A stretch of DNA of 24,134 bases from Macrostomum lignano. Its lineage: Eukaryota. The stretch spans positions 1-24,134 of the forward strand of contig NIVC01001042.1 of NCBI GenBank assembly GCA_002269645.1. Direction: 5' to 3'. Positions within the stretch are counted from its first letter, which is position 1; every line of letters starts with the position of its first letter. The notes beneath the pieces were generated by a model. It was not told where the DNA came from. It made no database searches and saw only the letters and a program-made list of their open reading frames with translations. Shown here piece after piece: positions 1-24,134 of the stretch. The position numbers and the translations under genes are program-made.

Positions 1-409
1 CGCTCCAGTAGGTTCTCGATGTTCTTCATCGGATACGAGTCGAAGGCCACAAGCTCATTCAGCGCCTTGAAGTTGACAGTGAACCGGACTGAGCTGTCTT
101 TCTTGGCCACCAGACAGACCGGGGACAGTAGTCACTGTCAGATGGTTCGATCACGCCCGAGGTCCAGCATGCGTTGAATCTCCTCTTGGAGCACTGCTGA
201 TGCGCCTGCGGCTCCCGTCGCGGCCGGATGCGCACTACGCGGTCAGATGTCGTCCGGATACGGTGCTCCACTAGGTCAGTCCTGCCCGGGATCTCGCTGA
301 AGACGCCCGCGAAGTCCTGCACCAAGCTGCAGGAGACGATCTCTCTCGCCGGTGTCAGATGTTCGGACAACTCAGGAGCACTCGTAGCTGCCGCTGGAAG
401 CTGCATCAA
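1..409 (-). pseudogene. pol: Linker and N-terminal part of reverse transcriptase (frameshifted, runs off window)
   Basis: QDFAGVFSEIPGRTDLVEHRI..., GVIEPSDSDY, then in another frame LVAKKDSSVRFTVNFKALNELVAFDSYPMKNIENLLER. This is the typical Ty3/gypsy RT start (LV.KKDG..R...DFR.LN.....D.YPM). Confidence 0.85.
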
Positions 410-419
410 AACCGTCTCC

Positions 420-1690
420 CGTGAATTGTACTTCTTAAGCAGGTTGACATGAAACGTGTTTGTCCGCAGGGCCCATCCGGATCCGGTAGTTCACATTTGC
501 TGGCACCTCTCCAGTACTTCATAGGGACCGCGCCCATTCAGCGTGAAGCTTCTTGGATGACGATGGCAGCAGCAGCAGCACTGATCTCCGGGCTGCAACT
601 CTCGTTCCCGCGACTGCCGGTCGTACCAGAGTTTCTGACGCTTCCGTGCTAGCTCTTCGCTGTTCCGTGCCGCTTCCTGGCAGCCCGCAGTCGGTCTCTC
701 TGGGCAGCACGAACGAGATGATGTCCTTCTTCTCTTCGGAGAGCTGCTCATCCCAGGTCTGCCACAGTAGATCTAGCGGTCCCCGCACAGTGCGTCCGTA
801 CAGCAGTTCGAATGGGGAGAAGCCAGTTGTTTCGTTGGCACCTCCCGAATGGCGAACAGCAGAAACGGTAGGTACTGGTCGCCACTTATTTTTCTCGGGC
901 GAGCTGGTAGTCTCCTCAACATATTCTTGAGAGTGCCGTGAGAACCTCTCCACCAACGCCTGGCTTTGCGGATGGTACGGCGTCGACTGATGCCCTCGGC
1001 GACCCCGGTACACCGGTACAGGGCCTGCAGGCAGTGCTGATGAAATAAGTTAGTAACCCTTATCGCTCTGGATCTCCCTCGGGAATCCGGTCCTCACGAA
1101 GCAGTCCACCAATGCCTTCGCTACAGACTCAGCGTCGATCTTTCGCAGCGGGACTCCTTCGGGGAATCGAGTAGCCGCATCGATAATCGACAGGATGTAC
1201 TGGTGACCACTCGCAGTCCTCGTATCGGTCCACTGATATCGATGATAACTTTGGTGAAGGCCTCCTCCACTCCAGGCACTTGGACTAGTGGTACCTTGTG
1301 ATAGCCTGGGACTCGAGCCGTCTTCTGACACTGTGTCGCACGTTGCTACGAAGTCCTTCACGTCCTTTGTCATCGTTGGCCACCAGAATCGCTGTTCAGT
1401 CGTTGGCAAGTCTTCCTTGTTCCCAAGTGGCCGCGAATGCACTCTCATGGGCCTGGGACAGCGCCGTAGCACGCAGAGCCTTCGGAAGCACCAGTTGGTC
1501 GTCCTCTCCAGCTGCTCGATGCCGAAACAGTCTGCCGCGGCTTTCCTTCACCAAGTCGTTGGTTTGTACCGCTGCTTGCAACTCCTTGTCGTCTTGTAGG
1601 GCCGCCTCGTAATCCAATGTTATAGGGCGCATTGCAGTTTCTTGTCTCGTTTTGTTGTACTCTTGCCGTTGTTTACGCGCTTGGGCTCTA
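420..1690 (-). pseudogene. pol: Retrotransposon integrase, split over several frames
   Basis: LVLPKALRATALSQAHESAFA/GHLG...RFWWPTMTKDVKDFVATCDT (HHCC region), DISG, YILSIIDAATRFPEGVPLRKIDAESVAKAL, EIQSDKG, TPYHPQSQALVERF, FSPFELLYGRTVRGPLDLL, GPYEVLER, FHVNLLKKY. Confidence 0.9.
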
Positions 1691-1691
1691 G

Positions 1692-3092
1692 TTATTCTTG
1701 ATTTTTTTTGCCAGCCGGCTCCGGATCGATCTGGTTAAGGCCGCTAAGCCACGATGCCCTCCGCGAAAAGCCTCTCGTCCCCCTCTGACTGGGGCATTGG
1801 CGGTGCGGCGCACCCACCCCTTCTCTCTCATTGGCTGAGAGGGGTTGGCCGTGAACCCCCTCGCGCGTCTCTCTTCCAAGCACTGTACTCGGGGCGTCTC
1901 CACCCTCCAACTTGAGCTGGCTAATCAAATCCAGTCCAACCAGCGCGCTTACGGGTAGTGAGTCAGCCACACAAACCTCAGTGGTTCTATTGTAGCCCTT
2001 TAGGTGCAGCTCCACTTTAGCGATTGGAAGACGGTGTACGTCGCCGCCAAAACAACGCAATAATGCATGATGTCCTGTCCAATTAATGTTTTCAGGCAGA
2101 CAGCTACGCCGAATCGTAGTTCGATCAGCTCCAGTATCCATCAGGAACCGCAGTTCTTTGCCATCCGCATGTCCGGTAATGAACCTGCCCGAAGCAGCAT
2201 CCATAGCTCTTTCCTCTGAGGCCAAGTGGACATTGGCGGGCTTGTTGGTACACTGAAACTTCTTGTGGGGGCCTCCGCAGTTGAAGCAGCTAATCTTAGG
2301 CTTTAGGCTTTGCGGTCTCTGAATCGTCCTTTGTTTGTCCACAGCATTGGACGCCGTCGCCCCCTCAGCGGTCTCTTGGCTCGGGTGTCCTGGTGTTCCG
2401 CCGCCCTTGTCGCTGTTTCTTGCCATTGCGTAGTCATCGGCCAGTTTCGCAGCCTCTTTGATGTCCTTCGGTTTTCTCTCTCGCATCCACACCTGGAGTC
2501 CTCTTGTCAGAGAGTCCGTAAACTGCTCCAGAAGCACTTTCTGCCTGACGATGGAGTCGCCACTTATCAGTTCCTCTCTCTGATCCTCGTCCAGCCCAGC
2601 TGTCATCCATCGGACAAACAGGTCTTCCAGCTTCGTTGCGAACACCTGGAAGGTCTCTTCAGGCGCCTTCCGCAAAGACCGAAATCGCTGTCGGTAGGTC
2701 TCCTCGCCGATGTTGTATCTCGCTAAGATGGTCGCCTTTGCCAAGTCGTAGTACGCGCTCGCCGCTGTCGTCAGACTGTGGAATGCGCTCTGCGCAACGC
2801 CCGTCAGTAGCGGTGCCAGCCGAATCGTCCACTCTGACTTTTGCCATCCACACGATGCCGCTGCCCTTTCGAAGGTCATCAGGAATGCCTCGATGTCACC
2901 AGAGTCCGTCAGCTTAAACAGCTTGGGCTCCGCTGCTTGTGGTCGTGGCTTAGACTCGGCCAGGAGCTTCGTGAACTCCGCTTGCTGACGAGCCAGTTGC
3001 TCCAGGTAGAATGCTGACTGTCTTTCTTGCGCGCGAGTCATTTCTTGTAGCTGCTGACTCTGGTGCGTCAGGAGCATCTTCATTGTCTTCAT
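1692..3092 (-). CDS. gag: Retrotransposon Gag (SCAN-like capsid region, CX2CX3HX4C zinc knuckle) plus aspartic protease
   Basis: The 526-aa track ORF starts at TTG inside the LTR; the first ATG is at 3092. It contains DIEAFLMTFERAA...WTIRLAPLLTG, ETYRQRFR...LLEQF...WMRERKP...EAAKLADDY (SCAN-like), CFNCGGPHKKFQC (2288-2250) and FLMDTGADRTTI. The reading becomes aberrant after about 1900 (frameshift). Confidence 0.9.
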   Translation of the reverse strand: MKTMKMLLTHQSQQLQEMTRAQERQSAFYLEQLARQQAEFTKLLAESKPRPQAAEPKLFKLTDSGDIEAFLMTFERAAASCGWQKSEWTIRLAPLLTGVAQSAFHSLTTAASAYYDLAKATILARYNIGEETYRQRFRSLRKAPEETFQVFATKLEDLFVRWMTAGLDEDQREELISGDSIVRQKVLLEQFTDSLTRGLQVWMRERKPKDIKEAAKLADDYAMARNSDKGGGTPGHPSQETAEGATASNAVDKQRTIQRPQSLKPKISCFNCGGPHKKFQCTNKPANVHLASEERAMDAASGRFITGHADGKELRFLMDTGADRTTIRRSCLPENINWTGHHALLRCFGGDVHRLPIAKVELHLKGYNRTTEVCVADSLPVSALVGLDLISQLKLEGGDAPSTVLGRETREGVHGQPLSANEREGVGAPHRQCPSQRGTRGFSRRASWLSGLNQIDPEPAGKKNQE

Positions 3093-3214
3093 CAGATTCG
3101 CGCCCTCCAGCGTAGCTGAATCTTGGATTCCGCTGGCTTCTTCAGCATTGTCTTCGGAGCCTTCTCCGAGCGCCCCGTCTTGGGAACGCAGGTTGTACGG
3201 GTGCTTCGAGCCCG

Positions 3215-3228
3215 CACCGCTGTCACCA
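3215..3228 (-). promoter_or_regulatory. Primer-binding site, probably tRNA-Leu
   Basis: TGGTGACAGCGGTG directly follows the ...CA LTR end. It resembles the complement of the tRNA-Leu(AAG/TAG) 3' end (TGGTGGCAGCGGTG, recalled from vertebrate tRNAs; 13/14 match). Confidence 0.65.
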
Positions 3229-3229
3229 A

Positions 3230-3388
3230 TGTTGCATTCTTGTAAATAAATAAGAATGAGATGATTGTCCAAAGGCTCCTAACGGAGCCGCAACAAAGAG
3301 AAAAACAAGTATCGCCCTCTGGCGCGCACCAGGTCTATTTATAGACTTATCAAAAATGGGGTGGCACAAAGAAAAGTCCACCGTCACA
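3230..3388 (-). repeat. Putative 5' LTR (about 159 bp)
   Basis: Minus strand starts TGTGACGG (3388) and ends ATGCAACA (3230), giving TGT...ACA termini. It contains CTATAAATAG (TATA-like, 3344-3335) and is followed after 1 nt by a TGG-initiated PBS. The partner LTR is outside the window, so the upstream boundary is inferred. Confidence 0.55.
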
Positions 3389-3773
3389 CGTACGTTTCTT
3401 GAATGTGTACAGATATTATTTATATTTATTTATTTGTTATACGTATGTTTCAGCACCAGCCCCCATGCCGATATTTTTTCAGCATCGACTCTATTTATTT
3501 AAAAAGGTTACTTTTTTGCAAAATAAGTATAAAGTTATCAACAGTCTCTCTCCAGGGAGAGTGTGCTTGGTTTTTTAGTTCGTTCTGGCTCGTAGTCTAA
3601 AAGAAAGTCTCTTATTGCGCAGAGTCAGTTTATTGCATAAATCTTCGAAACAGTCCACGGCGCCTTCCAAAGACCGAAACCGCGTCTATCTCGCGTCCCT
3701 GATAAGATGTAAAATCTACCCTGTCTTCTATATATTCTGGGTGCCTGTCTGTCTGTCTTTGATGTCACCAGCC

Positions 3774-3977
3774 TTCTGCGTCACCACCCTTCTGCGTCAC
3801 CACCCTTCTGCGTCACCACCCTTCTGCGTCACCACCCTTCTGCGTCACCACCCTTCTGCGTCACCACCCTTCTGCGTCACCACCTTCTGCGTCACCACCC
3901 TTCTGCGTCACCACCCTTCTGCGTCACCACCCTTCTGCGTCACCACCCTTCTGCGTCACCACCCTTCTGCGTCACCA
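3774..3977. repeat. 16-bp tandem repeat (TTCTGCGTCACCACCC)n, about 13 copies
   Basis: Directly visible; explains the FCVTTLLRHHPSASPP periodicity of ORF 3615..4010. Confidence 0.95.
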
Positions 3978-4108
3978 TCCCTCTGCCATGAGCATCCTCG
4001 GGCGCCATGAAGTTCCAGGTGCCTTTTGGCTGGTTGCCTGCGCTCAGACTGCAGGTTTTGACTAGTTCACCAACTGTCGCCTCATCATTTCTCACCGAGT
4101 CTCCTCAG

Positions 4109-6000: not shown

Positions 6001-6010
6001 GTATGTGCAC

Positions 6011-6345
6011 GCAGCCATTGCTCATGTGCCATGACCCATATCTCATGCACGCAGCCATTGCTCATGTGCCATGACCCATATCTCATGCACACAGCCATTG
6101 CCCATGTGCCATGACCCATATCTCATGCACACAGCCATTGCCCATGTGCCATGACCCACATCTCATGCACACAGCCATTGCTCATGTGCCATGACCCACA
6201 TCTCATGCACACAGCCATTGCTCATGTGCCATGACCCATATCTCATGCACACAGCCATTGCTCATGTGCTATGACCCATATCTCATGCACACAGCCATTG
6301 CCCATGTGCCATGACCCACATCTCATGCACACAGCCATTGCTCAT
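6011..6345. repeat. 40-bp tandem repeat, about 8.4 copies
   Basis: (A/G)CAGCCATTGC(T/C)CATGTGCCATGACCCA(T/C)ATCTCATGCAC recurs at 6011, 6051, 6091 ... 6331. Confidence 0.95.
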
Positions 6346-6364: not shown

Positions 6365-7998
6365 GATGTAGGATGGGGGGCAGGGAGAGAGACAGGCTGG
6401 GATGTAGGGTGAGGGGCAGGGAGAGAGACAGGCTGGGATGTAGGGTGAGGGGCAGGGAGAGAGACAGGCTGGGGGGCAGGGAGAGAGACAGGCTGGGATG
6501 CAGGGTGAGGGCAGGGAGAGAGACAGGCTGGGATGTAGGGTGAGGGGCAGGGAGAGAGACAGGCTGGGATGCAGGGTGAGGGCAGGGAGAGAGACAGGCT
6601 GGGATGTAGGGTGAGGGGCAGGGAGAGAGACAGGCTGGGATGTAGGGTGAGGGGCAGGGAGAGAGACAGGCTGGGATGTAGGGTGAGGGGCAGGGAGAGG
6701 CAGGCTGGGATGCAGGGTGAGGGCAGGGAGAGAGACAGGCTGGGATGTAGGGTGAGGGCAGGGAGAGAGACAGGCTGGGATGTAGGGTGAGGGGCAGGGA
6801 GAGAGACAGGCTGGGATGTAGGGTGAGGGGCAGGGAGAGAGACAGGCTGGGATGTAGGATGGGGGGCAGGGAGAGAGACAGGCTGGGATGTAGGGTGAGG
6901 GGCAGGGAGAGAGACAGGCTGGGATGTAGGATGGGGGGCAGGGAGAGAGACAGGCTGGGATGTAGGGTGAGGGGCAGGGAGAGAGACAGGCTGGGATGTA
7001 GGGTGAGGGGCAGGGAGAGAGACAGGCTGGGATGTAGGGTGAGGGGCAGGGAGAGAGACAGGCTGGGATGTAGGGTGAGGGGCAGGGAGAGAGACAGGCT
7101 GGGATGTAGGGTGAGGGGCAGGGAGAGAGACAGGCTGGGATGTAGGGTGAGGGGCAGGGAGAGAGACAGGCTGGGATGTAGGATGGGGGGCAGGGAGAGA
7201 GACAGGCTGGGATGTAGGGTGAGGGGCAGGGAGAGAGACAGGCTGGGATGTAGGGTGAGGGCAGGGAGAGAGACAGGCTGGGATGTAGGATGGGGGCAGG
7301 GAGAGAGACAGGCTGGGATGTAGGGTGAGGGGCAGGGAGAGAGACAGGCTGGGATGCAGGGTGAGGGCAGGGAGAGAGACAGGCTGGGATGTAGGGTGAG
7401 GGCAGGGAGAGAGACAGGCTGGGATGCAGGGTGAGGGCAGGGAGAGAGACAGGCTGGGATGTAGGGTGAGGGGCAGGGAGAGAGACAGGCTGGGATGTAG
7501 GGTGAGGGGCAGGGAGAGAGACAGGCTGGGATGTAGGATGGGGGCAGGGAGAGAGACAGGCTGGGATGTAGGGTGAGGGGCAGGGAGAGAGACAGGCTGG
7601 GATGTAGGGTGAGGGCAGGGAGAGAGACAGGCTGGGATGTAGGGTGAGGGGCAGGGAGAGAGACAGGCTGGGATGTAGGATGGGGGCAGGGAGAGAGACA
7701 GGCTGGGATGTAGGATGGGGGCAGGGAGAGAGACAGGCTGGGATTTAGGATGGGGGCAGGGAGAGAGACAGGCTGGGATGTAGGATGGGGGCAGGGAGAG
7801 AGACAGGCTGGGATGTAGGGTGAGGGGCAGGGAGAGAGACAGGCTGGGATGTAGGGTGAGGGCAGGGAGAGAGACAGGCTGGGGGGCAGGGAGAGAGACA
7901 GGCTGGGATGCAGGGTGAGGGGCAGGGCGAGAGACAGGCTGGGATGTAGGATGGGGGGCAGGGAGAGAGACAGGCTGGGATGTAGGATGGGGGGCAGG
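6365..7998. repeat. Purine-rich 35/36-bp minisatellite (GGGGCAGGGAGAGAGACAGGCTGGGATGTAGGGTGA)n, about 45 copies
   Basis: Directly visible; extreme G/A strand bias; source of ORFs 6283..8091, 6569..6790, 6787..7323 and 7745..8041. Confidence 0.97.
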
Positions 7999-8367
7999 GC
8001 TGGCCAATGGGAGGGGCCAAATATCTATACTGATTGGACACCCAAATACCCCCAAAATCGCGAATAAAACAGCTGTCATCAATCCAATCACTTCATCAGT
8101 TCATAACTTTCATCACTTCTTGGCCCTATTGGGTATATAGTCGTCCAGGTCAAAAGTACTTTTAAATCTCCGCAAACAATATCGCTTACAATACGCTACT
8201 CATAGTACTCAAAAGAATATCATTTTCCATTAAAGAGAAGAGCTGCATTGTATTCTCCAGAAATTCGTTTGCACCTGAAGATTCGCTATGCGCCTTGCGC
8301 TCTTGGGGGTGGGCACTCAGTTTTGGAATTTTCCAGTGTCTCTTCGGTGCACTTCACCTTGCAACAC

Positions 8368-9365: not shown

Positions 9366-9989
9366 ATGTCAGATGCAATTGGTAATGCGTGCACCTGCAA
9401 CCTCTGCTCCGCTCCAGACTGTCGCACAGCTGGTCATTCAAGGTGACTTTGACCAGGTGCAGCAGCTGGCAACCAGTCAGCTTGTGACGACAACCGACCA
9501 AGCCAACCGTACCGTTCTCATGCTAGCAGCCGACTCGCCAAGAATTCCAGATCAGGCTGAAACGTGCATTTTGTACTTAATTAAACTTGGCGCCGATACC
9601 AAAGCGATTGACCAGTCGGGCAACACGGCTGCGCATTTGGCAGCCCGACAGGACAACGTGCGGCTTCTGGCGCTGATGCCTTTCAATGCTAAGTGGCTGC
9701 AGAACAGCCAAGGCCTGACCCCGCTGATGGAGGCGGCTCAAACCGGAAGCTGGATCTGCGCCAAGCACCTGCTGCATCTGCTGCGGCAGTGGAGTCACAT
9801 TGAGTGGACGGAGACCGACAAGAAGGAAGCTGAGAGTTCGGACTCGCCTAAGCAGAATGGCGGCAAAGGACCCGAGAAGCCGAATAACGAACGAAAACGC
9901 CTGCTTGGCCTGAAGGACCTCAACGGTCTGACAGCTGTAGACATTGCGACGCGCAATGGGCATGAAGAGCTGGCTGGGTACATTGAGAG
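9366..9989 (+). CDS. Ankyrin-repeat protein exon (about 4 ANK repeats), part of a multi-exon gene
   Basis: RTVLMLAADS, GNTAAHLAARQDN, GLTPLMEAAQTG, GLTAVDIATRNGHEELAGYI. Polypyrimidine/AG acceptor at 9365 (or ATG at 9373) and a consensus donor AG|GTGAGT at 9990. Confidence 0.85.
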
Positions 9990-10163
9990 GTGAGTAGCTT
10001 GAGTAGCTGGCTCTTGAAACTGTACTATTAATGGCATATAGATCTGTTGACTTAAATCGAGCTGCATAATGCATGGCAGCCAATAAAAACGTTTTCATCC
10101 TACGGATCCTGCCGAATCATGCAGAAAAGTAGAAGTTTACATTAAAATTGTCTTAAATTGTAG

Positions 10164-11180: not shown

Positions 11181-12508
11181 TCAAATCAAATGTTGATACC
11201 TTGAAAGAATTCTCTGCTCCACTTCATCAGCGTCGTCACGTTGAGAGATTTCCTTGAGCCAGTTGACAGCTTGGTAGTCGCCTGGTGTCAGTTCCAGTCG
11301 CAGGCACTGCAACAGGGCCTCAAAGTTCATATAGTAAAAGTTCTCAAAGTTTTCCATCGGCAACGGGAAGCATTCAGAAATGAAGTCGTAAAAATCACTT
11401 TTCACTCGAAACTGAAATTTATGTCGCTGTCCAAATTTGAAGCAAAACTTCCACGCCGAATCCTGGGTTTCTAAATGCCTCCACACGATGCTTTCAGTTG
11501 CCTCAGCAGCTGGCCTGTCACTGGGCCATGCAAGACAACGGCAAACCTGGTGAGCTCGGCAGTCCGTCAGAAACTCCACGGCGGTGCTCAGGTCGTCAAA
11601 CATAAGGCAGCTCAAAGCTTTGAGACTCTGCCGGGCTGATCGAGCGCAATCTGGCAACTTGTCTAACTGCTCAAACAGAGTAGCATGAGCCTCGCCACCT
11701 TCATAGTTAACTTCAAAGAGACTAAGTAAAGATTCCCTTACTAAATTATACACTTTATGATACGCAGGCTCGTTCGACTTTTGATCCGGGTTCCACAAAA
11801 GAATAGGTAGTATGAGGAACGGATGAAAGTAAAACATGCCTTCAGCACTGACTGGTTTCAGATATTCATTGAAGCTCATCAGCAGCTGGGGCAAGTGGTC
11901 GATCACGTCTCGAAGAACTTGCACGATCTCTTCAAAACTGCTGCGATCGGCACCCTTCAGATACAAAGCCGCATCGCTCAAGAAGAAATGCTCCATTATT
12001 CGGCCATCTGTATTGTCAGCGGAACGACTCGTCTCGACACTGTCCAACAGCATCTGCACCGATCGACGGATGAGTGTCATAAGGTTCTCCGGCTTCCACT
12101 GCTCTTCTGGTGTCTCTTCAAGCATTCGGAACGTGACCGTCTTCGCGTGATACGCCTTCAGACCATGAACTCTGCGACCGATCACCTTCTTGACCAGAAA
12201 CTTGAGCGTGACGAACAGCTGGCCCTGCAGAGTTGTGAGACTCCGTAGCAGGCGTCTCTCTAGGAAGGTGGTGCTCACTCGGAGCTGCTTGCCGGCTTGT
12301 CCAGGAGGTGCCGCGTGAACCACGTGACAGGGCGAGGCTTCGAGCTCGCTTGTGAGAGACTGCAGCACCGTTTGTGGGATGCTGGATTTGGCCAGTCGAT
12401 GAGGCTGCAGCGGCCCGATTGGAGGATAGCAGCAGAGGCGACAGGCGCTCACGCGGTCCACGGCGGGTCGGAGAGTCGAACCGTTCTCTGGCCGGGCTGG
12501 GTTTGACG
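11181..12508 (-). CDS. Gene A exon 3: remainder of Mab-21 domain plus C-terminal domain
   Basis: ctttAG|CGTCAAAC; uninterrupted frame including track ORF 11181..12461; TGA stop at 11183-11181. Confidence 0.9.
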
Positions 12509-15348
12509 CTAAAGTTGGGAAGCAGAATTACGAGTATAATATAAAGTCCTTTCTAGATGACCAAAATACTAAATTTAAGCTCATAATCATTGAACCCTCA
12601 CCAAATCCTTCACATTCTATATGCCCGTTGTAGTAACTTGTTGTTTGTCGACTGTTAGCATTCGGCATTGGCAGAAGCGTCTCACGTGATACAATCGGCC
12701 AGGCATTAGCTGAACTACGTCAATGTCGGATTCAAAATCAGTTCTACCGTCCATACGTGTTAGACTGTTGCCCCAGCCCTCGGAGTAGCTTCCCACTACG
12801 AAGACCTCATTGTCATTCAGTCGGTTTCTTAGAATTGTTTCCAGTACGTCGGCCATTGCACTCTGCATTGCGGCTCTGGTTTCGGAAAATCCCGACTTGG
12901 TTAGTGCTGCGTGTAGCTGCAGACTGAGTTCTGTGTCTTCGGGTTGTGGTCTGAAGTTTAGTGAAGTTAGACATTTCTCCTTAGTATTCTTCTCGTACAT
13001 GTGATAAAAATTACAGCTAAAATACCTGTTTCATAAAATGGAACAAAACTTACCCATACTTAGTAAGGTTTTCAAACTGTTCAAAACGTTTACTAGATAA
13101 GTTCGCTTCTGGCTGAAGAACAGGTGGAATATCAGTACTGTCTTTTATTACTTCAGAGTCTGCAGCGCAATAATCGAAATTTTCTTGAGCCCTTCTGAGT
13201 CGTCTAGCTACAGGCAGATGGTTTTGAGCGAGGGACAACTCCAAAGGCGTATTTCCATCAAGTGCGTGTGGCTGATCGTGCATCTGGCTTCAAGCAGCAG
13301 CTCAACTACTCGATCATGACCTGACTTTGCGGCAATGTGCAGCGGCGACTTGCCACTCTTGGTTCGAATATCCGAATCTGCTTTAGAGCTCAGAAGCAAG
13401 TTGGTAATGTCAGTGTGACCCTGTTGGCTAGATATCAAAAGAGGCGAATATCCCTCTCCGACTTCTTGAAGATCTACTTCGGCTTGGCCTGTCAGGAGGG
13501 AAGACACAACTCCTACGTGACCCCAGTGCACTGCCAAGTGGAGCGGCGACTCTCCAGTATCCCTCTGGACGTCGACATTGGCCTGGGCTCCGATAAGCAA
13601 GTCAACAGTTTCCTGGTGGTTCTCTTGCGCTGCAATGTGCAAAGGTGCTAGAGAAAATTTCCAGAGGACATTCACATCTGCTTGCGACTTTATCAGAGCT
13701 TTGACGACTTCGCTATGGCCAAACTGTGCGGCCATGTATAAAGGCGAGAAGCCTCTTTCGTCTTGCAGTTCAACATCGGCTTGTGCCTTCAATAACTCAT
13801 TGACAACTTTTTCGTGTCCTTTTTGGCAGGCAATGTATAAAGGTGACTGACCGGTAAGCACTCGTGTATTAATGTTTGCTTGTGCTTTTATGAGTGTCTT
13901 AACAGATTCTTGGAGACCATCCTGCGAGGCAATGTAGAGTGGTGTTGCCTGCTCCACAGCTCCGAGATTTAGGTCAGATTGAGCCGTAATAAGCAAATTA
14001 AGCACGTTGATATGATTTTCTTGCGTTGCCATGTAAGCGGCAGTAGCTCCTGACCGAGATCGAAAATTTACATCGGCGTTAGCTGAAACCAATGCTTGCA
14101 ATAACTTGCAATCACCATGCTTAGAGACTAAATGGATTGGAGCGAACCCCTGATCGTCCAGAATATCTAGATTTGAGCGTGCTGTAATTAGGAGGCTGCT
14201 CAATTCGCAAGAGGCTCTGTTTAGCGCAGCATGAAGAGCAGTTTCTCCTGATAATCCTGGAGTATTCGGATCTGCTTGCGAATTGATAAGAAGCTCAATA
14301 ATGTGACGGCTTTCAGCTTGAGTGGCAAGAATGAGAGGTGTCATTGACTGTTCAGTCCGACAATCCAAGTTTGCCATTGCCTTAATTAATATCTGTACCA
14401 CCTGTCTATGACCATTCACGTTGCTGCATGCAAAGGTGATTTTTGGTCACAAGTTTGTGCGTCCGGATCAGCTTGCGCGTTGAGCAGAAAGGTCAAAAGT
14501 TTTTGATTGCCCTTTTCTGCCGAAATGAAAAGCGCGGACCTACCATTTCGAGTCTGTAAATTGACGTCAGCTTGCGCTAGTACAAGTGCTTTGGCTATGT
14601 GATACTGACCAGCTTTTGCCGCAATGAAGAGCGCTGTTGTCTCGTCTTTAGAGAGAAGATCGACATCAGCTTGAGCTGCAATCAGCATCTGAAGCACTTT
14701 CAAATAACCCTCTTGTGACGCCATGAAAATCGGTGACCAGCCCTCGTCGTCAGGCAAATTCACATCTGCATGTGCGTCCAGCAGCTGTCTGACAATTCCA
14801 CGGTGATTGAACTGTACAGCAGCAAGCAGGGGTGTCTCACCAGACTCTGTTTGCAGGTTCACATCGACACCGGCCTTGATTAATTTCCTAACGAATTCGA
14901 CTGAGCCATCCTGGCAGGCGATGTACAGCGGCGAACAACCGTTGCTTTGTCTGAGATTCAAGTCGGCTTGAGACCGAGCCAGATGGTACACAACATCGGG
15001 CCAATTGTCTTGAGCGGCAATGTGCATCGGGCTCGCCCCTTGAAACTGCTGGATATCCAAATCGGCCTGAGCCCTGATTAGCAGATCCACCACTTTGAGG
15101 TGGCCATTCTGCACCGCAAAGAATAACGGCGATTCGTTCTGCTTGTCAACAAGTTGACATCCGCCTGCGCTTTGATGAGCCTGTCAACGACTGCGTAGCG
15201 ACCGAGATAGCAGGCTAGTGCAGTGGAGTTGTACGGCCTGAGCAATATCTGATCTCCTCATTTAGCTCTATTAGCTTCTGAAAGGTGCTTATCAATATCT
15301 GCAAATTCTCCGTCTTGATTGCGTCCAGAAATTCTTTTTTGCTTGCAT
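11181..15348 (-). CDS. Gene A: ankyrin-repeat (about 21) + Mab-21/cGAS-like nucleotidyltransferase (cGLR-type) + C-terminal helical domain; 3 coding exons, about 1325 aa after repair of about 6 frameshifts
   Basis: Exons 15348-13054, 12950-12602 and 12508-11181 with GT..AG introns (103 bp, phase 2; 93 bp, phase 1). Phases close correctly after adding back 6 nt. Motifs: VVGSYSEGWG (12793-12776), SDIDVV (12727-12719), VDRVSA, CHVVH, LRVSTTFLERRLL, LKFL, LKAYHAKTVTF, QWKPENL, MEHFF. Confidence 0.88.
11869..12501 (-). repeat. Left arm of a 633-bp inverted repeat (partner 17751-18383)
   Basis: Manual comparison with the reverse complement of the right arm gave 9 substitutions and no indels (about 98.6% identity). 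Confidence 0.95.
12602..12950 (-). CDS. Gene A exon 2: Mab-21/cGAS-like spine helix and catalytic GS...DxD
   Basis: ttcAG|ACCACAACCC; EDTELSLQLHAALTKSGFSETRAAMQSAMADVLETILRNRLNDNEVFVVGSYSEGWGNSLTRMDGRTDFESDIDVVQL; ends YNGHIECEGF-G|GTGAGG after a 1-nt repair. Confidence 0.87.
13054..15348 (-). CDS. Gene A exon 1: ankyrin array (N-cap + about 21 repeats) and linker
   Basis: Joins an untracked segment MQAKKEFLDAIKTENL...TTPLHLACYLG...SPLFFAVQNG with track ORFs 14416..15114, 13208..14419 and 13050..13283. Repeated TPLH/SPLY-xAxxxG motifs occur every about 33 aa; donor GG|GTAAGT at 13053. Confidence 0.88.
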
Positions 15349-15767
15349 GTCAGCGTTTTTTGCAAATTATTAGCAAAGTAAGACCCTCTTTGAGAATTGC
15401 GATGGCTAAAGAGCTGTAGACAGTAAGCGAGCCATGATAGTCTATTTGTACTGCATCGCTGCAAGTAATGCACTGGATTAGTTGAATTTGAAAAAAGCGC
15501 TCGGGTAAATGCACATATATGCCAGTAGTTTCTTTCTCCCTGCAATTTCTGTCTTTTTGGCGTACACTTCTGTACGCAGAAACGTGCACGACCTAGGATA
15601 GAGAGAAAAATGTACGGTGGGAGTACCTTGTTCGCGGCATTACAATTAATAAGCACTAATGGTGCAATTATTTCAGGCGTAGCTCTGAGGCCCACTTTTT
15701 TCGATAGGCTCTTGGCACAGATCAAGTGCAGAAATTAAAGAGTAAATTTTAAGAATAGGTAAGCAAC
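15349..15767. promoter_or_regulatory. Probable bidirectional promoter/5' UTR region between head-to-head genes A and B
   Basis: 419 bp between the inferred ATG of A (15348) and the ATG of B (15768); AT-rich and non-coding. No specific element is claimed. Confidence 0.55.
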
Positions 15768-17234
15768 ATGGAGATAGAGTATCTCCAGGCCCTACTATCA
15801 GGAAATCTAGTAGTTGTCGATGCCTTTATAGCTGCTGGAGTTCCCGTGGACAAAATGTTCTACATCGGCGACAACTCTGGAGCTGCCCTTCATTTGGCCT
15901 CGTCAACTGGTCAAGTTGCAGTGGTCGACCGGCTGCTGAGAGCTCAAGCCGATGTCAATAGACGTCAAGAAGCCGGCGCCACGCCGCTGTTCCTGGCCGC
16001 CGAGTTTGGGCACGCGGACGTCGCCAAGCTGCTGCTTCAAAACGGTGCAAATGCCGACCTGCCGCGCTGGGACTCAGGCGACGCGCCGCTGCATATCGCA
16101 TGCGACAAGGGCCACACGGCGGTAGTAGATCGACTCATTGCCGCTGGAGCCGACCTCAATCCTGTACAGGAGGCAGGCTGCACCCCCATCTACATGGCAG
16201 CGCAAAATGGCCACTCCAAGATTGTCGCTCGGCTGCTCAGAGCTGGAGTCGACCTTGACTGGCGTTGTCTAACCAACGGGAATTCTGCTCTGCTCGCAGC
16301 CACTCAGGAAGGTCACGCTCGCGTTGTTGCTAGCCTTATTCAAGCGGCAGCCAACGTGAATCTTACTAACAAAAAAGGTGAAACAGCGTTGCACTTTGCT
16401 GCTCAAAATGGACAACTCAAGATTACTCAGCTACTTCTCAAGAGCCGCGCCGATGCCAACGTCAAAGCAAGCAACGGCTGCGAACCGATTCACACCGCGG
16501 CTCAGAACGGAAATCTGGCAATAGTGCAAGCCCTGATCGCAGCCCAGGCGGACGTCAACACTGTCGAGGTGGACGGTGCGTCTCCAGTTTACATCGCCTC
16601 ACAGAATGGCCATCAAAGAGTTATCAAAACTCTGATTGAATCGCAGGCTAACATTGATCATCAGCGCAATGACGGCGTGTCAACGATTTACATTGCCGCT
16701 CAAGAGGGTCACAGCGAAGTGGCCAGGCTGCTAGTGCGCTCTGGAGCAGCAAAAGTGGATGCACAAACTAGGACAGGAGAGACTCCACTGCACATTACTG
16801 CTCAGAGAGGCGACCAAGCGACTCTATACGAGCTTCTTCAAGCAGCTCAAGGTAGTCCAGTGAATTCGAAGCAGAACGACGGCTGCTCGCCGATTTTTCT
16901 GGCAGCGCAGTTCGGTCATTGGAAAGCCATTGAGCGTCTTATTCACGCTGGTGCCGATGTCAACACGACAAGAGCGACTACAGGGCAGACACCTCTGCAC
17001 GCCGCAGCTGAGAATGGACATCCAGAAGCGACTAAATCGCTGCTCCGATGCTTTGCTGATGTCACTGCAACAGACAGGGATGGTCAACCCTTTAGACTTG
17101 GCTAAAAATGTAACCACAAAACAGTTGCTGAACTTCTTGGAAGGCCCTATATGGCAGGATAATTCAGAAGATGCTGGGACTGTGCAAGACGAGCCGATAA
17201 CGTCACAAGTTGATAAAAGCAGTTCCAGCTTGAG
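15768..17234 (+). CDS. Gene B exon 1: ankyrin array (N-cap + about 13 repeats) and linker
   Basis: Track ORF 15768..17105 continues in the frame of 16930..17238 (DGQTPLDLAK after a 2-nt repair at about 17087); donor AG|GTAATA at 17235. Confidence 0.9.
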
Positions 17235-19179
17235 GTAATATAACTTCATAAAGCCGCACAGTAAATATCCTTTACTCTGAAAATTCACATTAAGTTTCAC
17301 TTTCAATTTCTCGTACGTATTTCAGCGAAGAAGAATTCAGTCAGCAACTGCACAGTTCTCCAGCAGGCTGGCTTTGAGCAGACCCGAGCTGCCCTTCAGA
17401 GCTCGTGTGCGACGTCCTGCAGCGCATACTAAGACAACGCCTACGCAGCGAAGAAGTTTTTGTTGTTGGCAGCTACTCGGAAGGCTGGGGAAACAGCCTC
17501 AGCCATTTGGATGGCAGAACGGACCCAGAATCCGACATAGACGTGATGCAGCTCATACCAGGAAGGATTTATCACCTGAAAGATGTCTGCAGGTGCACTG
17601 ATCCTGACTCTGAACTAGTTGTGGAATTGACAACGGTCATATAATCTGTGAAGGATATGGTAAGCATATTTTTATTTCTCTAATCTCGAAACTCTAAAGC
17701 TCGAAGTTATAATAGTCTTCAGTAATTTACCAATCTCAATCAGCTTCCAGCCCAGCCCGGCCAGAGAACGGTTCGACTCTCCGACCCGCCGTGGACCGCG
17801 TGAGCGCCTGTCGCCTCTGCTGCTATCCTCCAATCGGGCCGCTGCAGCCTCATCGACTGGCCAAATCCAGCATCCCACAACCGGTGCTGCAGTCTCTCAC
17901 AAGCGAGCTCGAAGCCTCGCCCTGTCACGTGGTTCACGCGGCACCTCCTGGACAAGCCGGCAAGCAGCTCCGAGTGAGCACCACCTTCTTAGAGAGACGC
18001 CTGCTACGGAGTCTCACGACTCTGCAGGGCCAGCTGTTCGTCACGCTCAAGTTTCTGGTCAAGAAGGTGATCGGTCGCAGAGTTCACGGTCTGAAGGCGT
18101 ATCACGCGAAGACGGTCACGTTCCGAATGCTTGAAGAGACACCAGAAGAGCAGTGGAAGCCGGAGAACCTTGTGACACTCATCCGTCGATCGGTGCAGAT
18201 GCTGTTGGACAGTGTCGAGACGAGTCGTTCCGCTGACAATACAGATGGTCGAATCATGGAGCATTTCTTCTTGAGCGATGCAGCTTTGTATCTGAAGGGT
18301 GCCGATCGCAGCAGTTTTGAAGAGATCGTGCAAGTTCTTCGAGACGTGATCGACCACTTGCCCCAGCTTCTGATGAGCTTCAAAAACAGCCTGTACCAAA
18401 TTGGGTCAAACAATTTGTTTCATTTTCACCCATTTCTTATTCTCCCAGAGATCGATCCAAAGTTTTCAACAGGGCTGCACTTCCGCGATTATTACAGCAT
18501 CTATGACATCGTAAGAGATTCGTTTGAATCTCTGGTCGTGCCTGACTTTAGCCGTGAATTCGAAGCCTCCCTGGTGAAGAAGATTGGCAGGTTGCCAGAC
18601 TGTGCTAGATCAGCTCGCGAGAGCCTCAGGGCCCTGGTCTGCCTGAAATTTAACGATACAGTTGCCGCCTCTGATGTTTTGTTGGACTGCAACGGTCACA
18701 TAGTAAGCAGAGGCATTAAGGAATTCGCTTCTAGACCCGCAGAAGGGTCAGGGGAGTCGGCAGTATTCAACCAGCTATGCAACAGCGACCTAGCCTGGAG
18801 ATTCAGCTTCATGTTCCTAAGCCGGCCGGATCTGTCCAGCCTCCTACCGGATCATCTGGCCACCTGGTTTCCCCTGCGAATGGAGAACTACGACGCGTTC
18901 TACTATATAAACTTTGATTGCCTGCTGCTTTGTCTGAGTTGCGAGCTGCGAGTCAAAAGCGCCGAGGCTCGGAACGCTTGGCTTCTGGGTCTGCTTCTGC
19001 GCGACGAAGCAGACATTCAGGAACTGCTCACTGCCATGCGATACTGCTCAGATCACAGTCTGGCTCTATCGGTGATTAGAAAATTTCAAACAAGCATTCA
19101 AAGCCACGAGCTAACGTCTAAAGAACTGATAAGATTTCAACAGGAGCGTCTTCTAGCTGATTTACCACAGGCCTTCTAG
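15768..19179 (+). CDS. Gene B: ankyrin-repeat (about 13) + Mab-21/cGAS-like nucleotidyltransferase (cGLR-type) + C-terminal helical domain; 3 coding exons, about 1080 aa after repair of 4 frameshift sites
   Basis: Exons 15768-17234, 17326-17659 and 17744-19179; GT..AG introns of 91 bp (phase 2) and 84 bp (phase 1) at the same positions as in gene A. Motifs: VVGSYSEGWG (17468-17485), SDIDVM (17534-17542), VDRVSA (D at 17794), LKAYHAKT. Confidence 0.88.
17326..17659 (+). CDS. Gene B exon 2: Mab-21/cGAS-like spine helix and catalytic GS...DxD
   Basis: tttcAG|CGAAGAAG; reconstructed EEEFSQQLHTVLQQAGFEQTRAALQSSCADVLQRILRQRLRSEEVFVVGSYSEGWGNSLSHLDGRTDPESDIDVMQL...DNGHIICEGY-G|GTAAGC. Confidence 0.85.
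17744..19179 (+). CDS. Gene B exon 3: remainder of Mab-21 domain plus C-terminal domain
   Basis: caatcAG|CTTCCAGC; uninterrupted frame including track ORF 17791..19179; TAG stop at 19177-19179. Confidence 0.9.
17751..18383 (+). repeat. Right arm of the 633-bp inverted repeat (partner 11869-12501)
   Basis: CCCAGCCCGGCCAGAGAACGG ... CTGATGAGCTTCAA; the arms enclose about 5.25 kb. Confidence 0.95.
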
Positions 19180-21227: not shown

Positions 21228-22640
<1,413 letters not shown>

Positions 22641-23587
22641 TAGTACACGTATCTACATATAGTCAAAGCTACTTAATGCATACATAGGTGGAAGCCACAC
22701 TGAAAAGTGCAGCTACTTTGGATTCCGCAAGCCTCTTTGCAGCTGCTGTGTGATTGGACAGGAACCGCGAGTCCTGGACTGGAGGAAACTGGATTGGAAG
22801 GCGCGGCCATGGCATAGAAGCGGAGCAGACAGACGGGATAAAAATGATCCTATCGCGGACGCCACGCCTCCCATTTCCAACTGCCTGAGCTGGCGTCACA
22901 GATCCACTCCCAGCCGAGATCCCCAATGCCGAGAATGCGATTCCGGAGCTGCCCAGTCTGACCTCACCTTGAAAGCGGCACAGAGCGCAGCTCCGGCGGA
23001 GCCAAGCAAAGAAGAGGGCGAAGACAGAAACCCGGCATTGCGGATCTGTCTTTCTTTGCATTTGCTTTTTCTGCCGCAGCCTCACGACCCTGCCGCCGGT
23101 GACAATTTCCGTGGCGGCTCGGCTGCTTTCTACCTGATCCCTTCTCCGCCCTCCCTACTAGAAAGTGCAGCGCAGCAAGGAGAGACCGACTGAAGGGAGT
23201 AGAAGAGAGCTCAATACGTGTCTCCAAGGCTGAGACTTTAGAAAGTCTTCAAGGATTCTTCTCTCGATAAGCCTCTGTCAAGAAGCTGTCGAGTGTAGCA
23301 TCGTGTAAGTGGCTCTCGTCCAATTTGTTTGGCAAAGTGCGCAGCAAATGAATATGCTTGGCAAGCCTGCCCACATTTCACTCTTTTTTTGAGATTTTAG
23401 CATACAGACTTTTCTTAGATATAAACAGCTGCAACTCGTAGGTAGGGAATACAGGATTAAGTATAAGTCGTAGACTATTGTTAAGCGTAGACATGCAGAA
23501 GTCATTGATGCTCGAAATATATCATCTGTAGGTCCTGTTCACCATAGGTAAATAGAGACATTCCCTGATCATAATAGACGTATTTTG

Positions 23588-24134
23588 TGGTTATTATTAG
23601 GCGTCCTTAGTTATTACATACAACCTTCACACTAAGCGTCCTTAGATATTGCATACATCCTTGATCATTAAGCGTCCTTAGTTATTACATACTTGTACAT
23701 CCTTGATTATTAGGCGTCCTTAGTTATTAAATACAATCTTGATCATTAGGCGTCCTTAATATTACATACATCCTTGATTAGTAGGCAATCATTGATATTA
23801 CATACATCCTCGATCATTAAGCATCAATAGTTAGTACACAACATCCTTGACATTAAGTATCACTAGTTAGTACACACATCTCTAATCATTAAGTATCATT
23901 AGTTAGTACACATATCCTAATCATAAGTATCATTAGTTAGTACACAACATCCTTGATCATTAAGCATTATTAGCTAGTGTAAACATCCTTGATCATTACA
24001 CATTCTTGGTTATTACATACATCCTTGATCATAAGAATCCTTGGTTATTGCATACATCCTTGATCATTAAGCATTATTTGTTAGTGTACACATCCTTGAT
24101 GCATAAGAATCCTTGGTTATTACATACATCCTTG
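23588..24134. repeat. Degenerate AT-rich tandem repeat, about 36-38 bp unit, about 15 copies, running off the right edge
   Basis: Consensus approximately ATCCTTGATCATTAAGCGTCCTTAGTTATTACATAC, with variant blocks. Confidence 0.88.

What the first reader, a model, noticed from the sequence alone, without database searches (positions are those of the whole stretch)
11181..19179. Head-to-head pair of ankyrin-cGAS-like (ANK-Mab-21/cGLR) receptor genes
Seen: two paralogs point away from each other with only 419 bp between start codons. They share the architecture ANK array - NTase (GSxxEG...DxD...D) - Mab-21 helical lobe - extra C-terminal domain, and have identical intron positions and phases. Established: Mab-21/cGAS-family enzymes (cGAS, invertebrate cGLRs) are innate-immune sensors that make cyclic dinucleotides read by STING; long ANK arrays are ligand- or protein-binding scaffolds; head-to-head paired receptors are well known for plant NLRs (RRS1/RPS4, RGA4/RGA5). 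Inference: this may be a co-regulated, possibly heterodimeric sensor pair in which variable ANK arrays gate a conserved nucleotide second-messenger enzyme. I know of no characterised paired ANK-cGLR locus but cannot search to confirm novelty. No STING gene lies in this window.
Basis: partly seen in the sequence, partly recalled or inferred. Interest (0 to 1): 0.88.

Follow-up and report, generated by a model that had tools for sequence, protein, structure and literature searches.

The report
Divergent pair of flatworm ANK-cGLR genes
Two back-to-back flatworm (Macrostomum lignano) genes each fuse a long ankyrin-repeat array to a cGAS-like enzyme core. They belong to an expanded family already catalogued as cGAS-like receptors, and the back-to-back arrangement is not typical of that family.

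Summary
The observation mostly holds. Gene A (- strand, 15348..11181) and gene B (+ strand, 15768..19179) diverge from a 419-bp spacer. Both encode an ANK array (about 21 and 13 repeats), a cGAS-fold nucleotidyltransferase core with GS / DxD / D motifs, and a family-specific C-terminal domain. Both have two GT-AG introns.

- Neither gene is an intact ORF in this sequence. Twelve 1-2-nt deletions break the frames, most likely assembly errors.
- A 642-nt inverted repeat, 98% identical, covers the start of exon 3 in both genes. It looks like a recent gene-conversion tract between otherwise old paralogues.

All homologues found are from Macrostomum lignano, apart from three unnamed database entries. 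Li et al. 2023 already list ANK-cGLR fusions. They list M. lignano proteins among them and cloned five relatives of A and B (30-41% identical). None is labelled among their 15 active enzymes.

None of 11 other family loci (±10 kb) has a head-to-head family partner; one has a same-strand tandem pair. Membership in the cGLR family is supported. The paired or heterodimeric sensor idea is not. This is a new member of a known kind.

The parts
11181..15348 (-). Gene A, an ANK-cGLR. The conceptual product is 1325 aa after six frame corrections.
   Evidence: Frames were joined at about 15334, 15218, 15150, 14418, 13279 and 12641. There are no in-frame stop codons.
13054..15348 (-). Gene A exon 1: N-terminal cap, about 21 ankyrin repeats and a linker.
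   Evidence: Pfam Ank / Ank_2, E 1e-44 to 1e-69. Repeat count.
12951..13053 (-). Gene A intron 1 (103 nt, GT-AG, phase 2).
12602..12950 (-). Gene A exon 2: N-terminal half of the NTase core, with the GS motif (12764-12793) and the SDIDV motif (12716-12730).
   Evidence: Database protein P0021 reads through the frameshift here as CQCPNANSRQTTSYYNGH.
12509..12601 (-). Gene A intron 2 (93 nt, GT-AG, phase 1).
11181..12508 (-). Gene A exon 3: strand with the third catalytic Asp (PAVDRV, 12450-12467), the Mab-21 helical lobe, the C-terminal domain and the TGA stop.
15349..15767 (.). 419-bp spacer between the two start codons (41% GC). It may be a shared 5' regulatory region; this was not tested.
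   Evidence: The N-terminal motifs of A (KEFLDAIK...) and B (EYLQALLS...) resemble the N-terminal region of family member P0052 (QQEFLSAVA...), which supports these start codons.
15768..19179 (+). Gene B, an ANK-cGLR. The conceptual product is 1080 aa after six frame corrections.
   Evidence: Database protein P0015 is 98% identical over 697 aa and reads through all six corrected sites.
15768..17234 (+). Gene B exon 1: N-terminal cap, about 13 ankyrin repeats and a linker.
   Evidence: Pfam Ank_2, E 7e-90. Repeat count.
17235..17325 (+). Gene B intron 1 (91 nt, GT-AG, phase 2).
17326..17659 (+). Gene B exon 2: N-terminal half of the NTase core, with the GS motif (17468-17497) and the SDIDV motif (17531-17545).
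   Evidence: Weak NTP_transf_2 hit of 19 bits.
17660..17743 (+). Gene B intron 2 (84 nt, GT-AG, phase 1).
17744..19179 (+). Gene B exon 3: third catalytic Asp (PAVDRV, 17785-17802), the Mab-21 helical lobe, the C-terminal domain and the TAG stop.
11869..12510 (-). Inverted-repeat arm in gene A, read as a gene-conversion tract. It covers the first 212 codons of exon 3.
   Evidence: 642 nt with 12 mismatches and no indels. Differences are 8 synonymous and 3 non-synonymous. Identity in the flanks drops to 35% and 53%.
17742..18383 (+). Inverted-repeat arm in gene B, read as a gene-conversion tract.
11184..11870 (-). Gene A family-specific C-terminal domain (229 aa, mixed alpha/beta).
   Evidence: AlphaFold pLDDT 85.5. 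No significant PDB fold match; best E 0.27.
18382..19176 (+). Gene B family-specific C-terminal domain (265 aa), 40% identical to that of A.
   Evidence: No database protein matches it above 53% identity.

Best explanation
These are two real, anciently diverged paralogues of an expanded Macrostomum lignano gene family. The family fuses an N-terminal ankyrin-repeat array to a cGAS/Mab-21-fold nucleotidyltransferase core and a family-specific C-terminal domain. The literature already counts this family among cGAS-like receptors (cGLRs).

The two genes happen to sit divergently, 419 bp apart. A stretch of about 0.63 kb at the start of exon 3 has recently been homogenised between them by gene conversion across the inverted orientation. 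That stretch encodes the third catalytic Asp and the whole helical lobe.

The twelve frame breaks are most likely consensus errors in this assembly of a repeat-rich, multi-subgenome genome, not real lesions.

Inferred mechanism, not shown here: each protein is a ligand-controlled nucleotidyltransferase that makes a nucleotide second messenger. The ANK array, and perhaps the C-terminal domain, would act as the ligand-binding or autoinhibitory module. The low predicted pI of the cores (5.9-6.0) argues against nucleic acid as the ligand, because Li et al. 2023 found that nucleic-acid-sensing cGLRs have a high pI. Each gene probably acts on its own. The divergent arrangement is probably incidental, as happens within local gene-family clusters.
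For:
- Fold: the best PDB matches are cGAS, Cv-cGLR1, MAB21L1 and MB21D2. A family profile hits cGAS at 4e-5. hhalign aligns LKYLVKK..YHAKT and LRVSTTFLE with cGAS LMKYLL..SYHVKT and WRLSFSHIE.
- Active site: G49, S50, D71 and D73 are invariant and D130 is nearly invariant in 12 family members.
- Prior cataloguing.
- Real paralogues plus conversion: protein identity is 59% (NTase exon), 98.6% (tract) and 40% (rest of exon 3). Synonymous sites are saturated outside the tract, and dS is 0.05 inside it.
- Selection: omega is about 0.08 in the NTase exon. In the tract there are 3 non-synonymous against 8 synonymous differences (P = 0.0009 under neutrality).
- Frame breaks as errors: all are 1-2-nt changes, mostly deletions, and several lie in short homopolymer runs. 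Neither conceptual product (1325 and 1080 codons) has a stop codon. Near-identical database copies P0015 and P0021 read through 8 of the 12 sites.
- Near-identical extra copies are expected, because M. lignano carries three subgenomes that differ by 1.4-2.4% (PMC10733133).
- Pairing is not a family trait: 0 of 11 loci.
Against: - The frame breaks are clustered. All six in B lie within 17088-17627, and three of the six in A lie within 15150-15334. A uniform error process would not do this, so one or both copies could be decaying in this subgenome.
- No expression data were available.
- Enzyme activity is unproven. None of the five M. lignano relatives cloned by Li et al. 2023 carries an active-enzyme label in their Table S3.
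- The Pfam Mab-21 NTase model PF03281 does not hit, and Mab-21_C sits only at its threshold.
- Only 11 loci, ±10 kb each, from one assembly were sampled for pairing.
Confidence: 0.6

Rival explanations
1. A and B form a co-regulated sensor pair driven by a bidirectional promoter, possibly a heterodimer, as with head-to-head plant NLR pairs. Variable ANK arrays would gate a shared, conserved enzyme module.
For: - Divergent orientation with only 419 bp between the ATGs.
- The catalytic/helical module is kept 98.6% identical between the two genes while the ANK arrays, the NTase N-terminal half and the C-terminal domains differ.
- cGAS itself works as a dimer (established knowledge).
Against: - None of 11 other family loci is paired head-to-head. 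The one local duplicate found is in same-strand tandem.
- Both members keep the full catalytic motif set, so there is no sensor/helper asymmetry.
- Homogenisation of a 0.63-kb tract is what ordinary gene conversion between nearby inverted paralogues produces.
- There are no data on expression or interaction.
Confidence: 0.1
2. One or both genes are genuine pseudogenes in this subgenome. The twelve frameshifts would be real lesions that accumulated after whole-genome duplication made the copies redundant.
For: - There are twelve frame breaks, clustered rather than evenly spread.
- One is a 2-nt deletion in a TCTC repeat (about 17358), which fits replication slippage as well as it fits sequencing error.
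- The 17089-17232 region of B also differs from P0015 by several substitutions.
- Redundant homeologous copies exist.
Against: - No stop codons arise by substitution in 2400 codons.
- All lesions are 1-2 nt, and most fit deletions.
- Omega is about 0.1, both across the old divergence and within the young tract.
- All family-invariant residues are retained.
- Other copies read through 8 of the 12 sites.
Confidence: 0.22
3. The proteins have the cGAS/Mab-21 fold but are not cyclic-nucleotide synthases. They could act like MAB21L1, or as scaffolds, or as a different kind of nucleotidyltransferase, so the 'receptor' label would be wrong.
For: - MAB21L1 and MB21D2 are among the fold matches.
- PF03281 is not hit.
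- None of the five M. lignano relatives is labelled active in Li et al. Table S3.
- Li et al. 2023 state that most flatworms have no cGLRs beyond Mab21-like proteins.
Against: - The GS / DxD / D motif is invariant or nearly invariant across the family, whereas Li et al. describe Mab21L1/2/3 as lacking a predicted functional active site.
- Li et al. attribute the inactivity of many cGLRs in vitro to unknown ligands.
- Their constructs begin at the NTase region and so lacked the ANK arrays.
Confidence: 0.2
4. The 98% inverted repeat is an artefact of assembly or short-read polishing that homogenised two paralogues, not a biological conversion tract.
For: - Published analysis reports that 36% of the Mlig_3_7 assembly length is chimeric between subgenomes.
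- The tract begins within about 10 nt of the exon 3 boundary.
Against: - Twelve differences remain between the arms, with a bias towards synonymous changes.
- The same tract appears in independently predicted database proteins. It is attached to B-like fronts in P0010, P0011 and P0015 and to an A-like front in P0021, with the A-type and B-type variants differently distributed.
Confidence: 0.05

Closest known systems
Macrostomum lignano ANK-cGLR proteins catalogued by Li et al. 2023 (bioRxiv 10.1101/2023.02.22.529553 / PMC9980059). PAA86972.1, PAA45980.1, PAA57558.1, PAA93208.1 and PAA68676.1 were cloned for the screen. PAA86972.1, PAA45980.1 and PAA68676.1 are listed with Ank_2 domains in the stored part of Table S2.
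   Same: - Same species.
- Same architecture of an ANK array followed by a cGAS-like core.
- Same signature motifs (GS..GWG, DxD, LRVST..LE, LKxYHAKT, HFF, FHPF).
- 30-41% identity, E 1e-45 to 1e-77.
   Different: - A and B are different paralogues, and neither is in that list.
- This locus is a divergent pair that shares a conversion tract, which that paper does not describe.
- The five cloned relatives carry no active-enzyme label.
Vertebrate cGAS and invertebrate cGLRs with solved structures (for example mouse cGAS 5xzb/4k9b, human cGAS 6ct9, C. virginica Cv-cGLR1 8gjw).
   Same: - Bilobal NTase plus helical-lobe fold (Foldseek E about 1e-7).
- The same order of GS, acidic pair, third Asp, RxS..E and SYHxKT motifs along the chain.
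   Different: - 13-16% sequence identity.
- No cGAS zinc thumb is evident.
- Acidic to neutral pI (5.9-7.5) instead of basic.
- An extra N-terminal ANK array and a C-terminal domain of 229-265 aa with no PDB match.
- Ligand and product are unknown.
Head-to-head plant NLR pairs (RRS1/RPS4, RGA4/RGA5).
   Same: Two paralogous putative immune receptors in divergent orientation with a short shared upstream region.
   Different: - A different protein family.
- No sensor/helper asymmetry.
- The pairing does not recur in the family (0 of 11 loci).
- No functional evidence.
[quoted passage not shown] 2023, Figure 4C).
   Same: A cGLR core fused to ANK repeats, within a lineage-specific expansion of cGLR genes.
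   Different: A different phylum. I did not compare the sequences. Only 3 of the coral's 42 cGLRs carry extra ligand-interacting domains such as ANK repeats or death domains, whereas ANK fusion is the common state in the M. lignano family.

Membership tests
cGAS-like receptors (cGLR; animal Mab-21-fold CD-NTases) | Bilobal cGAS/Mab-21 nucleotidyltransferase fold | tested here: met
   AlphaFold model of the A core: pLDDT 84.8, pTM 0.88. The top Foldseek PDB hits are cGAS, Cv-cGLR1, MAB21L1 and MB21D2, with E 7e-8 to 7e-6, probability 1.00 and target-normalised TM 0.47-0.59.
cGAS-like receptors (cGLR; animal Mab-21-fold CD-NTases) | Predicted functional active site: a G-S loop, an acidic pair [DE]x[DE], and a third Asp on the neighbouring strand | tested here: met
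   GSYSEGWG, SDIDV and PAVDRV are present in both genes. G, S, D and D are invariant and the third D is at least 90% conserved in the family alignment. In the model they lie on or next to strands E49-52, E75-89 and E132-141. I did not inspect a residue-by-residue superposition on cGAS.
cGAS-like receptors (cGLR; animal Mab-21-fold CD-NTases) | Match to the Pfam Mab-21 models (PF03281 NTase domain, PF20266 Mab-21_C) | tested here: inconclusive
   PF20266 scores 24.8, 24.0 and 23.6 bits against a cut-off of 24.1. PF03281 is not hit even at E <= 10. A family profile hits cGAS in the PDB at 4e-5, but only over the helical lobe.
cGAS-like receptors (cGLR; animal Mab-21-fold CD-NTases) | Homology to proteins already placed in the published cGLR set | tested here: met
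   BLASTP of the A and B cores against five M. lignano sequences from Li et al. Table S3 gives 30-41% identity and E 1e-45 to 1e-77.
cGAS-like receptors (cGLR; animal Mab-21-fold CD-NTases) | Ligand-dependent synthesis of a nucleotide second messenger that is read by STING or another receptor | not testable with these tools
   This needs biochemistry. The relatives in the published screen carry no active label. I did not determine whether M. lignano has a STING gene; none lies in this window.
Paired head-to-head immune receptors (sensor/helper pairs) | Divergent orientation with a short shared upstream region | tested here: met
   419 bp between the ATGs at 15348 (-) and 15768 (+).
Paired head-to-head immune receptors (sensor/helper pairs) | The pairing recurs or is conserved across paralogous loci | tested here: not met
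   In 11 other family loci (L001-L011, ±10 kb), tblastn with the A core finds no partner on the opposite strand. L002 has a same-strand tandem copy.
Paired head-to-head immune receptors (sensor/helper pairs) | Functional asymmetry, co-dependence or physical association of the two partners | not testable with these tools
   Both genes keep all catalytic and family-invariant residues. There are no data on interaction or expression.
Pseudogene | Frame-disrupting lesions | tested here: inconclusive
   Twelve 1-2-nt frame breaks are present in this sequence. Near-identical copies read through 8 of them. Whether they are real cannot be settled without reads.
Pseudogene | Relaxed selective constraint (dN/dS near 1, stop codons) | tested here: not met
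   Omega is 0.08 in the NTase exon and 0.12 in the tract. There are no in-frame stops in 1325 and 1080 codons.

The most novel reading that the evidence does not exclude
The divergent pair could be a functional unit whose shape matters. The 642-nt inverted repeat lies in frame inside exon 3 of both genes. A crossover within it would flip the 5.2-kb segment that carries the shared upstream region and both ANK-NTase front halves. That would swap the two divergent C-terminal domains between the receptors and give four receptor combinations from two genes. Recurrent conversion would meanwhile keep the catalytic/helical module compatible, for example for heteromer formation. B-like database proteins that carry A-type tract variants (P0010, P0011) are compatible with such exchange, but simple gene conversion explains them equally well.
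Probability: 0.06. Interest if true: 0.75.

Novelty: new member of a known kind. Interest (0 to 1): 0.3.

Why it matters
Flatworms are generally described as having lost cGLR signalling, and M. lignano is the exception, with dozens of ANK-fused cGLR genes of unknown ligand and product. This locus adds two members to that set. It also shows that the family evolves by local duplication, by loss of an intron in some paralogues, and by gene conversion that homogenises the catalytic/helical module while the ANK arrays and C-terminal domains diverge. That pattern suggests the repeat arrays and the C-terminal domain are the parts free to diversify, so they are the natural candidates for ligand recognition. 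Because M. lignano is a transgenic-ready model, this can be tested. The locus does not establish a new paired-receptor principle.

Tried and rejected
- Exhaustive representative search. The profile kept about 290 ANK columns, so about 498,000 ankyrin proteins swamped the result. It says nothing about how far the cGLR core extends outside Macrostomum, although it did return more family members (P0050, P0052, P0056, P0162).
Local mode aligned only the helical-lobe motifs.
- The contig look-up for P0015 found nothing on record. I could therefore not fetch DNA of the near-identical B copy, and the frameshift sites could be compared only at protein level.
- Fold search of the C-terminal domain found no significant match.
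- Rfam and tRNA scans of the window found nothing.
- The bacterial promoter scanner was not used, because it does not apply to a flatworm.
- Assembly duplication was rejected, because the two genes are anciently diverged outside the tract.
- I considered short introns as the cause of the frame changes near the end of exon 2 and rejected them. P0015 and P0021 read straight through those sites.
- I did not search for STING in M. lignano. The word-indexed protein search would not reach a flatworm STING from a vertebrate query.
Full report
**What is in the sequence**

The region 11181-19179 holds two genes on opposite strands that point away from each other. Long ORF fragments on the - strand (14416-15114, 13208-14419, 12617-13000, 11181-12461) and on the + strand (15768-17105, 17405-17644, 17791-19179) give strong ankyrin-repeat hits, E 1e-44 to 1e-90. 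They also give a weak NTP_transf_2 hit and Mab-21_C hits at the Pfam threshold.

Reading the DNA and all frames gives two three-exon models with canonical GT-AG introns.

| | Exon 1 | Intron 1 | Exon 2 | Intron 2 | Exon 3 | Product |
|---|---|---|---|---|---|---|
| Gene A (-) | 15348-13054 | 103 nt, phase 2 | 12950-12602 | 93 nt, phase 1 | 12508-11181 | 1325 aa |
| Gene B (+) | 15768-17234 | 91 nt, phase 2 | 17326-17659 | 84 nt, phase 1 | 17744-19179 | 1080 aa |

Both N-termini resemble the N-terminal region of another family member, P0052. Intron 2 is at the identical codon in both genes. Intron 1 has the same phase but lies about four alignment columns apart in a variable linker. A has about 21 ankyrin repeats and B about 13.

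Neither gene is a continuous reading frame here.
- Gene A needs six frame corrections, at about 15334, 15218, 15150, 14418, 13279 and 12641.
- Gene B needs six, at about 17088, 17107, 17139, 17358, 17409 and 17627.

Most fit a 1-nt deletion. The one at 17358 is a 2-nt deletion, and those at 17088 and 17139 could be a 2-nt deletion or a 1-nt insertion. Several lie in short homopolymer runs.

I think these are mostly assembly errors, for four reasons:
- The corrected products have no stop codon in 1325 and 1080 codons.
- Database proteins from other near-identical copies read straight through 8 of the 12 sites. P0015 is 98% identical to B, and P0021 is 92% identical to A over the part it covers.
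- Selection is strong, as described below.
- M. lignano carries three subgenomes that differ by 1.4-2.4%, and its reference assembly is reported to be partly chimeric. Near-identical copies and polishing problems are therefore expected (PMC10733133).

The caveat is that the breaks are clustered. All six in B fall within 540 nt. Real decay of this particular copy is therefore not excluded. I give it about 0.2.

The arms 11869-12510 and 17742-18383 are 642 nt long and differ at 12 positions with no indels. The repeat starts about 10 nt inside exon 3 and covers its first 212 codons. That stretch encodes the strand with the third catalytic Asp and the whole helical lobe.

| Segment | A-B protein identity | Synonymous sites |
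|---|---|---|
| NTase exon | 59% | saturated |
| Tract (212 codons) | 98.6% | dS 0.05 |
| Rest of exon 3 | 40% | saturated |

DNA identity in the 60 nt on either side of the tract drops to 35% (intron side) and 53% (coding side).

This is the signature of a recent gene conversion between old paralogues, not of an assembly duplication. Inside the tract, 8 differences are synonymous and 3 are not (omega 0.12; P = 0.0009 under neutrality). In the NTase exon omega is about 0.08. B-like database proteins carry either A-type residues (P0010, P0011) or the B-type residue (P0015) at the diagnostic tract positions. The exchange therefore differs among gene copies and is not an artefact of this one assembly.

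**What the proteins are**

Of the 46 proteins found with the family profile, 43 are named as M. lignano proteins, usually 'Mab-21 domain-containing' or 'ANK_REP_REGION domain-containing'. Most carry Ank domains.

In an alignment of twelve members, G49, S50, D71 and D73 are invariant and D130 is nearly invariant. The motifs LRVSTTFLE, LKYLVKK..YHAKT, HFF..DAA.YL and FHPF are also conserved.

An AlphaFold model of the A core (558 aa, pLDDT 84.8, pTM 0.88) matches mouse, human and pig cGAS best, then the oyster receptor Cv-cGLR1, MAB21L1 and MB21D2. Foldseek E values are 7e-8 to 7e-6, probability is 1.00, and the alignments span about 350-400 columns. A family profile finds cGAS in the PDB at 4e-5 over the helical lobe. 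Local hhalign aligns the family's two C-lobe motifs with cGAS WRLSFSHIE and LMKYLL..SYHVKT.

The Pfam Mab-21 NTase model PF03281 does not hit. The family is therefore divergent in sequence but cGAS-like in fold and active-site layout.

The last 229 aa (A) or 265 aa (B) form a confidently predicted mixed alpha/beta domain (pLDDT 85.5). It has no significant match among solved structures.

Predicted pI is 5.9-6.0 for the cores and 6.2-7.5 for the NTase-Mab21 part alone. Li et al. 2023 found that nucleic-acid-sensing cGLRs are basic, so these proteins are unlikely to be nucleic-acid sensors.

**Comparison with what is known**

Li et al. 2023 (bioRxiv 10.1101/2023.02.22.529553, PMC9980059) built a tree of about 3,000 cGLRs and named ANK-cGLR fusion as one of the domain architectures. 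They noted that 'most platyhelminthes' have no cGLRs beyond Mab21-like proteins.

The stored part of their Table S2 lists M. lignano proteins with Ank_2 domains: PAA67649.1, PAA58690.1, PAA68676.1, PAA86972.1, PAA45980.1 and PAA68216.1. Their Table S3 shows that five M. lignano proteins (rows 89-93) were cloned from the NTase region onward for the 140-enzyme screen. The A and B cores are 30-41% identical to these five, E 1e-45 to 1e-77. Our profile also recovers a full-length protein, P0162, that contains the PAA45980.1 construct almost exactly.

The column that labels the 15 active enzymes is empty for the M. lignano rows. No product or ligand is therefore known for this clade.

The architecture and its cGLR assignment are already in the literature. 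I found no paper describing a head-to-head ANK-cGLR locus.

**Is pairing a property of the family?**

I fetched eleven other family loci with 10 kb on each side from assembly GCA_002269645.1 and scanned them with the A core.
- None has a family member on the opposite strand.
- L002 has two copies in same-strand tandem.
- L008 has a divergent neighbour with weak ANK hits but no cGLR core.
- Fused database models (P0050, P0021) also point to same-strand tandem copies.
- Intron 2 is missing in some paralogues: L004, L006 and L009 give uninterrupted matches.

The divergent arrangement here therefore looks like one outcome of local duplication and rearrangement, not a family design principle.

**Most likely mechanism**

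Shown:
- Two real paralogues with a cGAS-like fold, an intact active-site motif set and purifying selection.
- A recent conversion tract.

Inferred:
- Each protein is a ligand-controlled nucleotidyltransferase that produces a nucleotide signal.
- The ANK array, and perhaps the C-terminal domain, acts as the recognition or autoinhibitory module.
- The ligand is more likely a protein or small molecule than nucleic acid.

Not supported: obligate pairing or heterodimerisation.

Untested: expression, use of a shared promoter, the enzyme product, and whether M. lignano has a STING gene.

**The most novel reading still open**

The inverted repeat is in frame in both genes. A crossover within it would invert the 5.2-kb segment between the arms and swap the two divergent C-terminal domains between the two receptors. 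I rate a functional role for this at about 0.06.

**Verdict**

The cGLR assignment is right. The paired-receptor interpretation and the novelty claim are not supported. This is a new member of a known kind, with a tidy example of gene conversion as a side result. Interest 0.3.

Noticed in passing
window 59-3272 (- strand): Fragments of a retroelement. One 526-aa ORF has a SCAN-like gag domain and a retroviral aspartyl protease. Further ORFs carry the integrase zinc-binding and core domains. The frames are broken and no reverse-transcriptase domain was detected.
   Followed up: partly
window 3764-3986, 6006-6345, 6466-7999, 21228-22643, 23596-24134: Large tandem arrays: 16 nt x14, 40 nt x8.5, 36 nt x43 (strongly G-skewed, and the source of a spurious 602-aa ORF), GATA x355, and a 36/71-nt array that runs off the window end.
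   Followed up: no
window 9373-9993 (+ strand): A small intact 206-aa ORF made only of ankyrin repeats (Ank_2, E 2e-14), convergent with gene A. Database model P0021 merges the antisense of this region with two A-like gene copies, which suggests a different arrangement or a misassembly in another M. lignano assembly.
   Followed up: partly
window 11184-11870 (-) and 18382-19176 (+): The family-specific C-terminal domain is predicted with confidence (pLDDT 85.5) but has no significant match among solved structures; the best Foldseek E is 0.27, to TPR-like helical proteins. No database protein matches the B version above 53% identity.
   Followed up: yes
A and B cores, for example window 17590-17600, 17806-17823 and 17917-17935 in B: A set of invariant or nearly invariant Cys and His residues (CxC, ACRLCC, CHVVH) lies in the NTase core and might form a metal-binding site. 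It differs from the cGAS zinc thumb.
   Followed up: no
L004 11822-12922, L006 11577-13301, L009 11471-13216: In these paralogues the NTase and Mab-21 parts are matched without interruption, so the intron that separates exons 2 and 3 in A and B is absent. This points to intron loss or gain within the family.
   Followed up: no
L002 10001-13742 and 17434-23512; L008 5575-8510: L002 holds two ANK-cGLR genes in same-strand tandem. In L008 a gene with weak ANK hits but no cGLR core lies divergently 1.5 kb upstream of an ANK-cGLR gene.
   Followed up: partly
window 17881-17883 and 18172-18174 (B); 12371-12369 and 12080-12078 (A): The diagnostic amino-acid differences inside the conversion tract (P/T and V/M) are distributed differently among B-like database proteins. 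P0010 and P0011 carry the A-type residues (T, M). P0015 carries the B-type P at the first position and ends before the second. Conversion state therefore differs among gene copies.
   Followed up: partly
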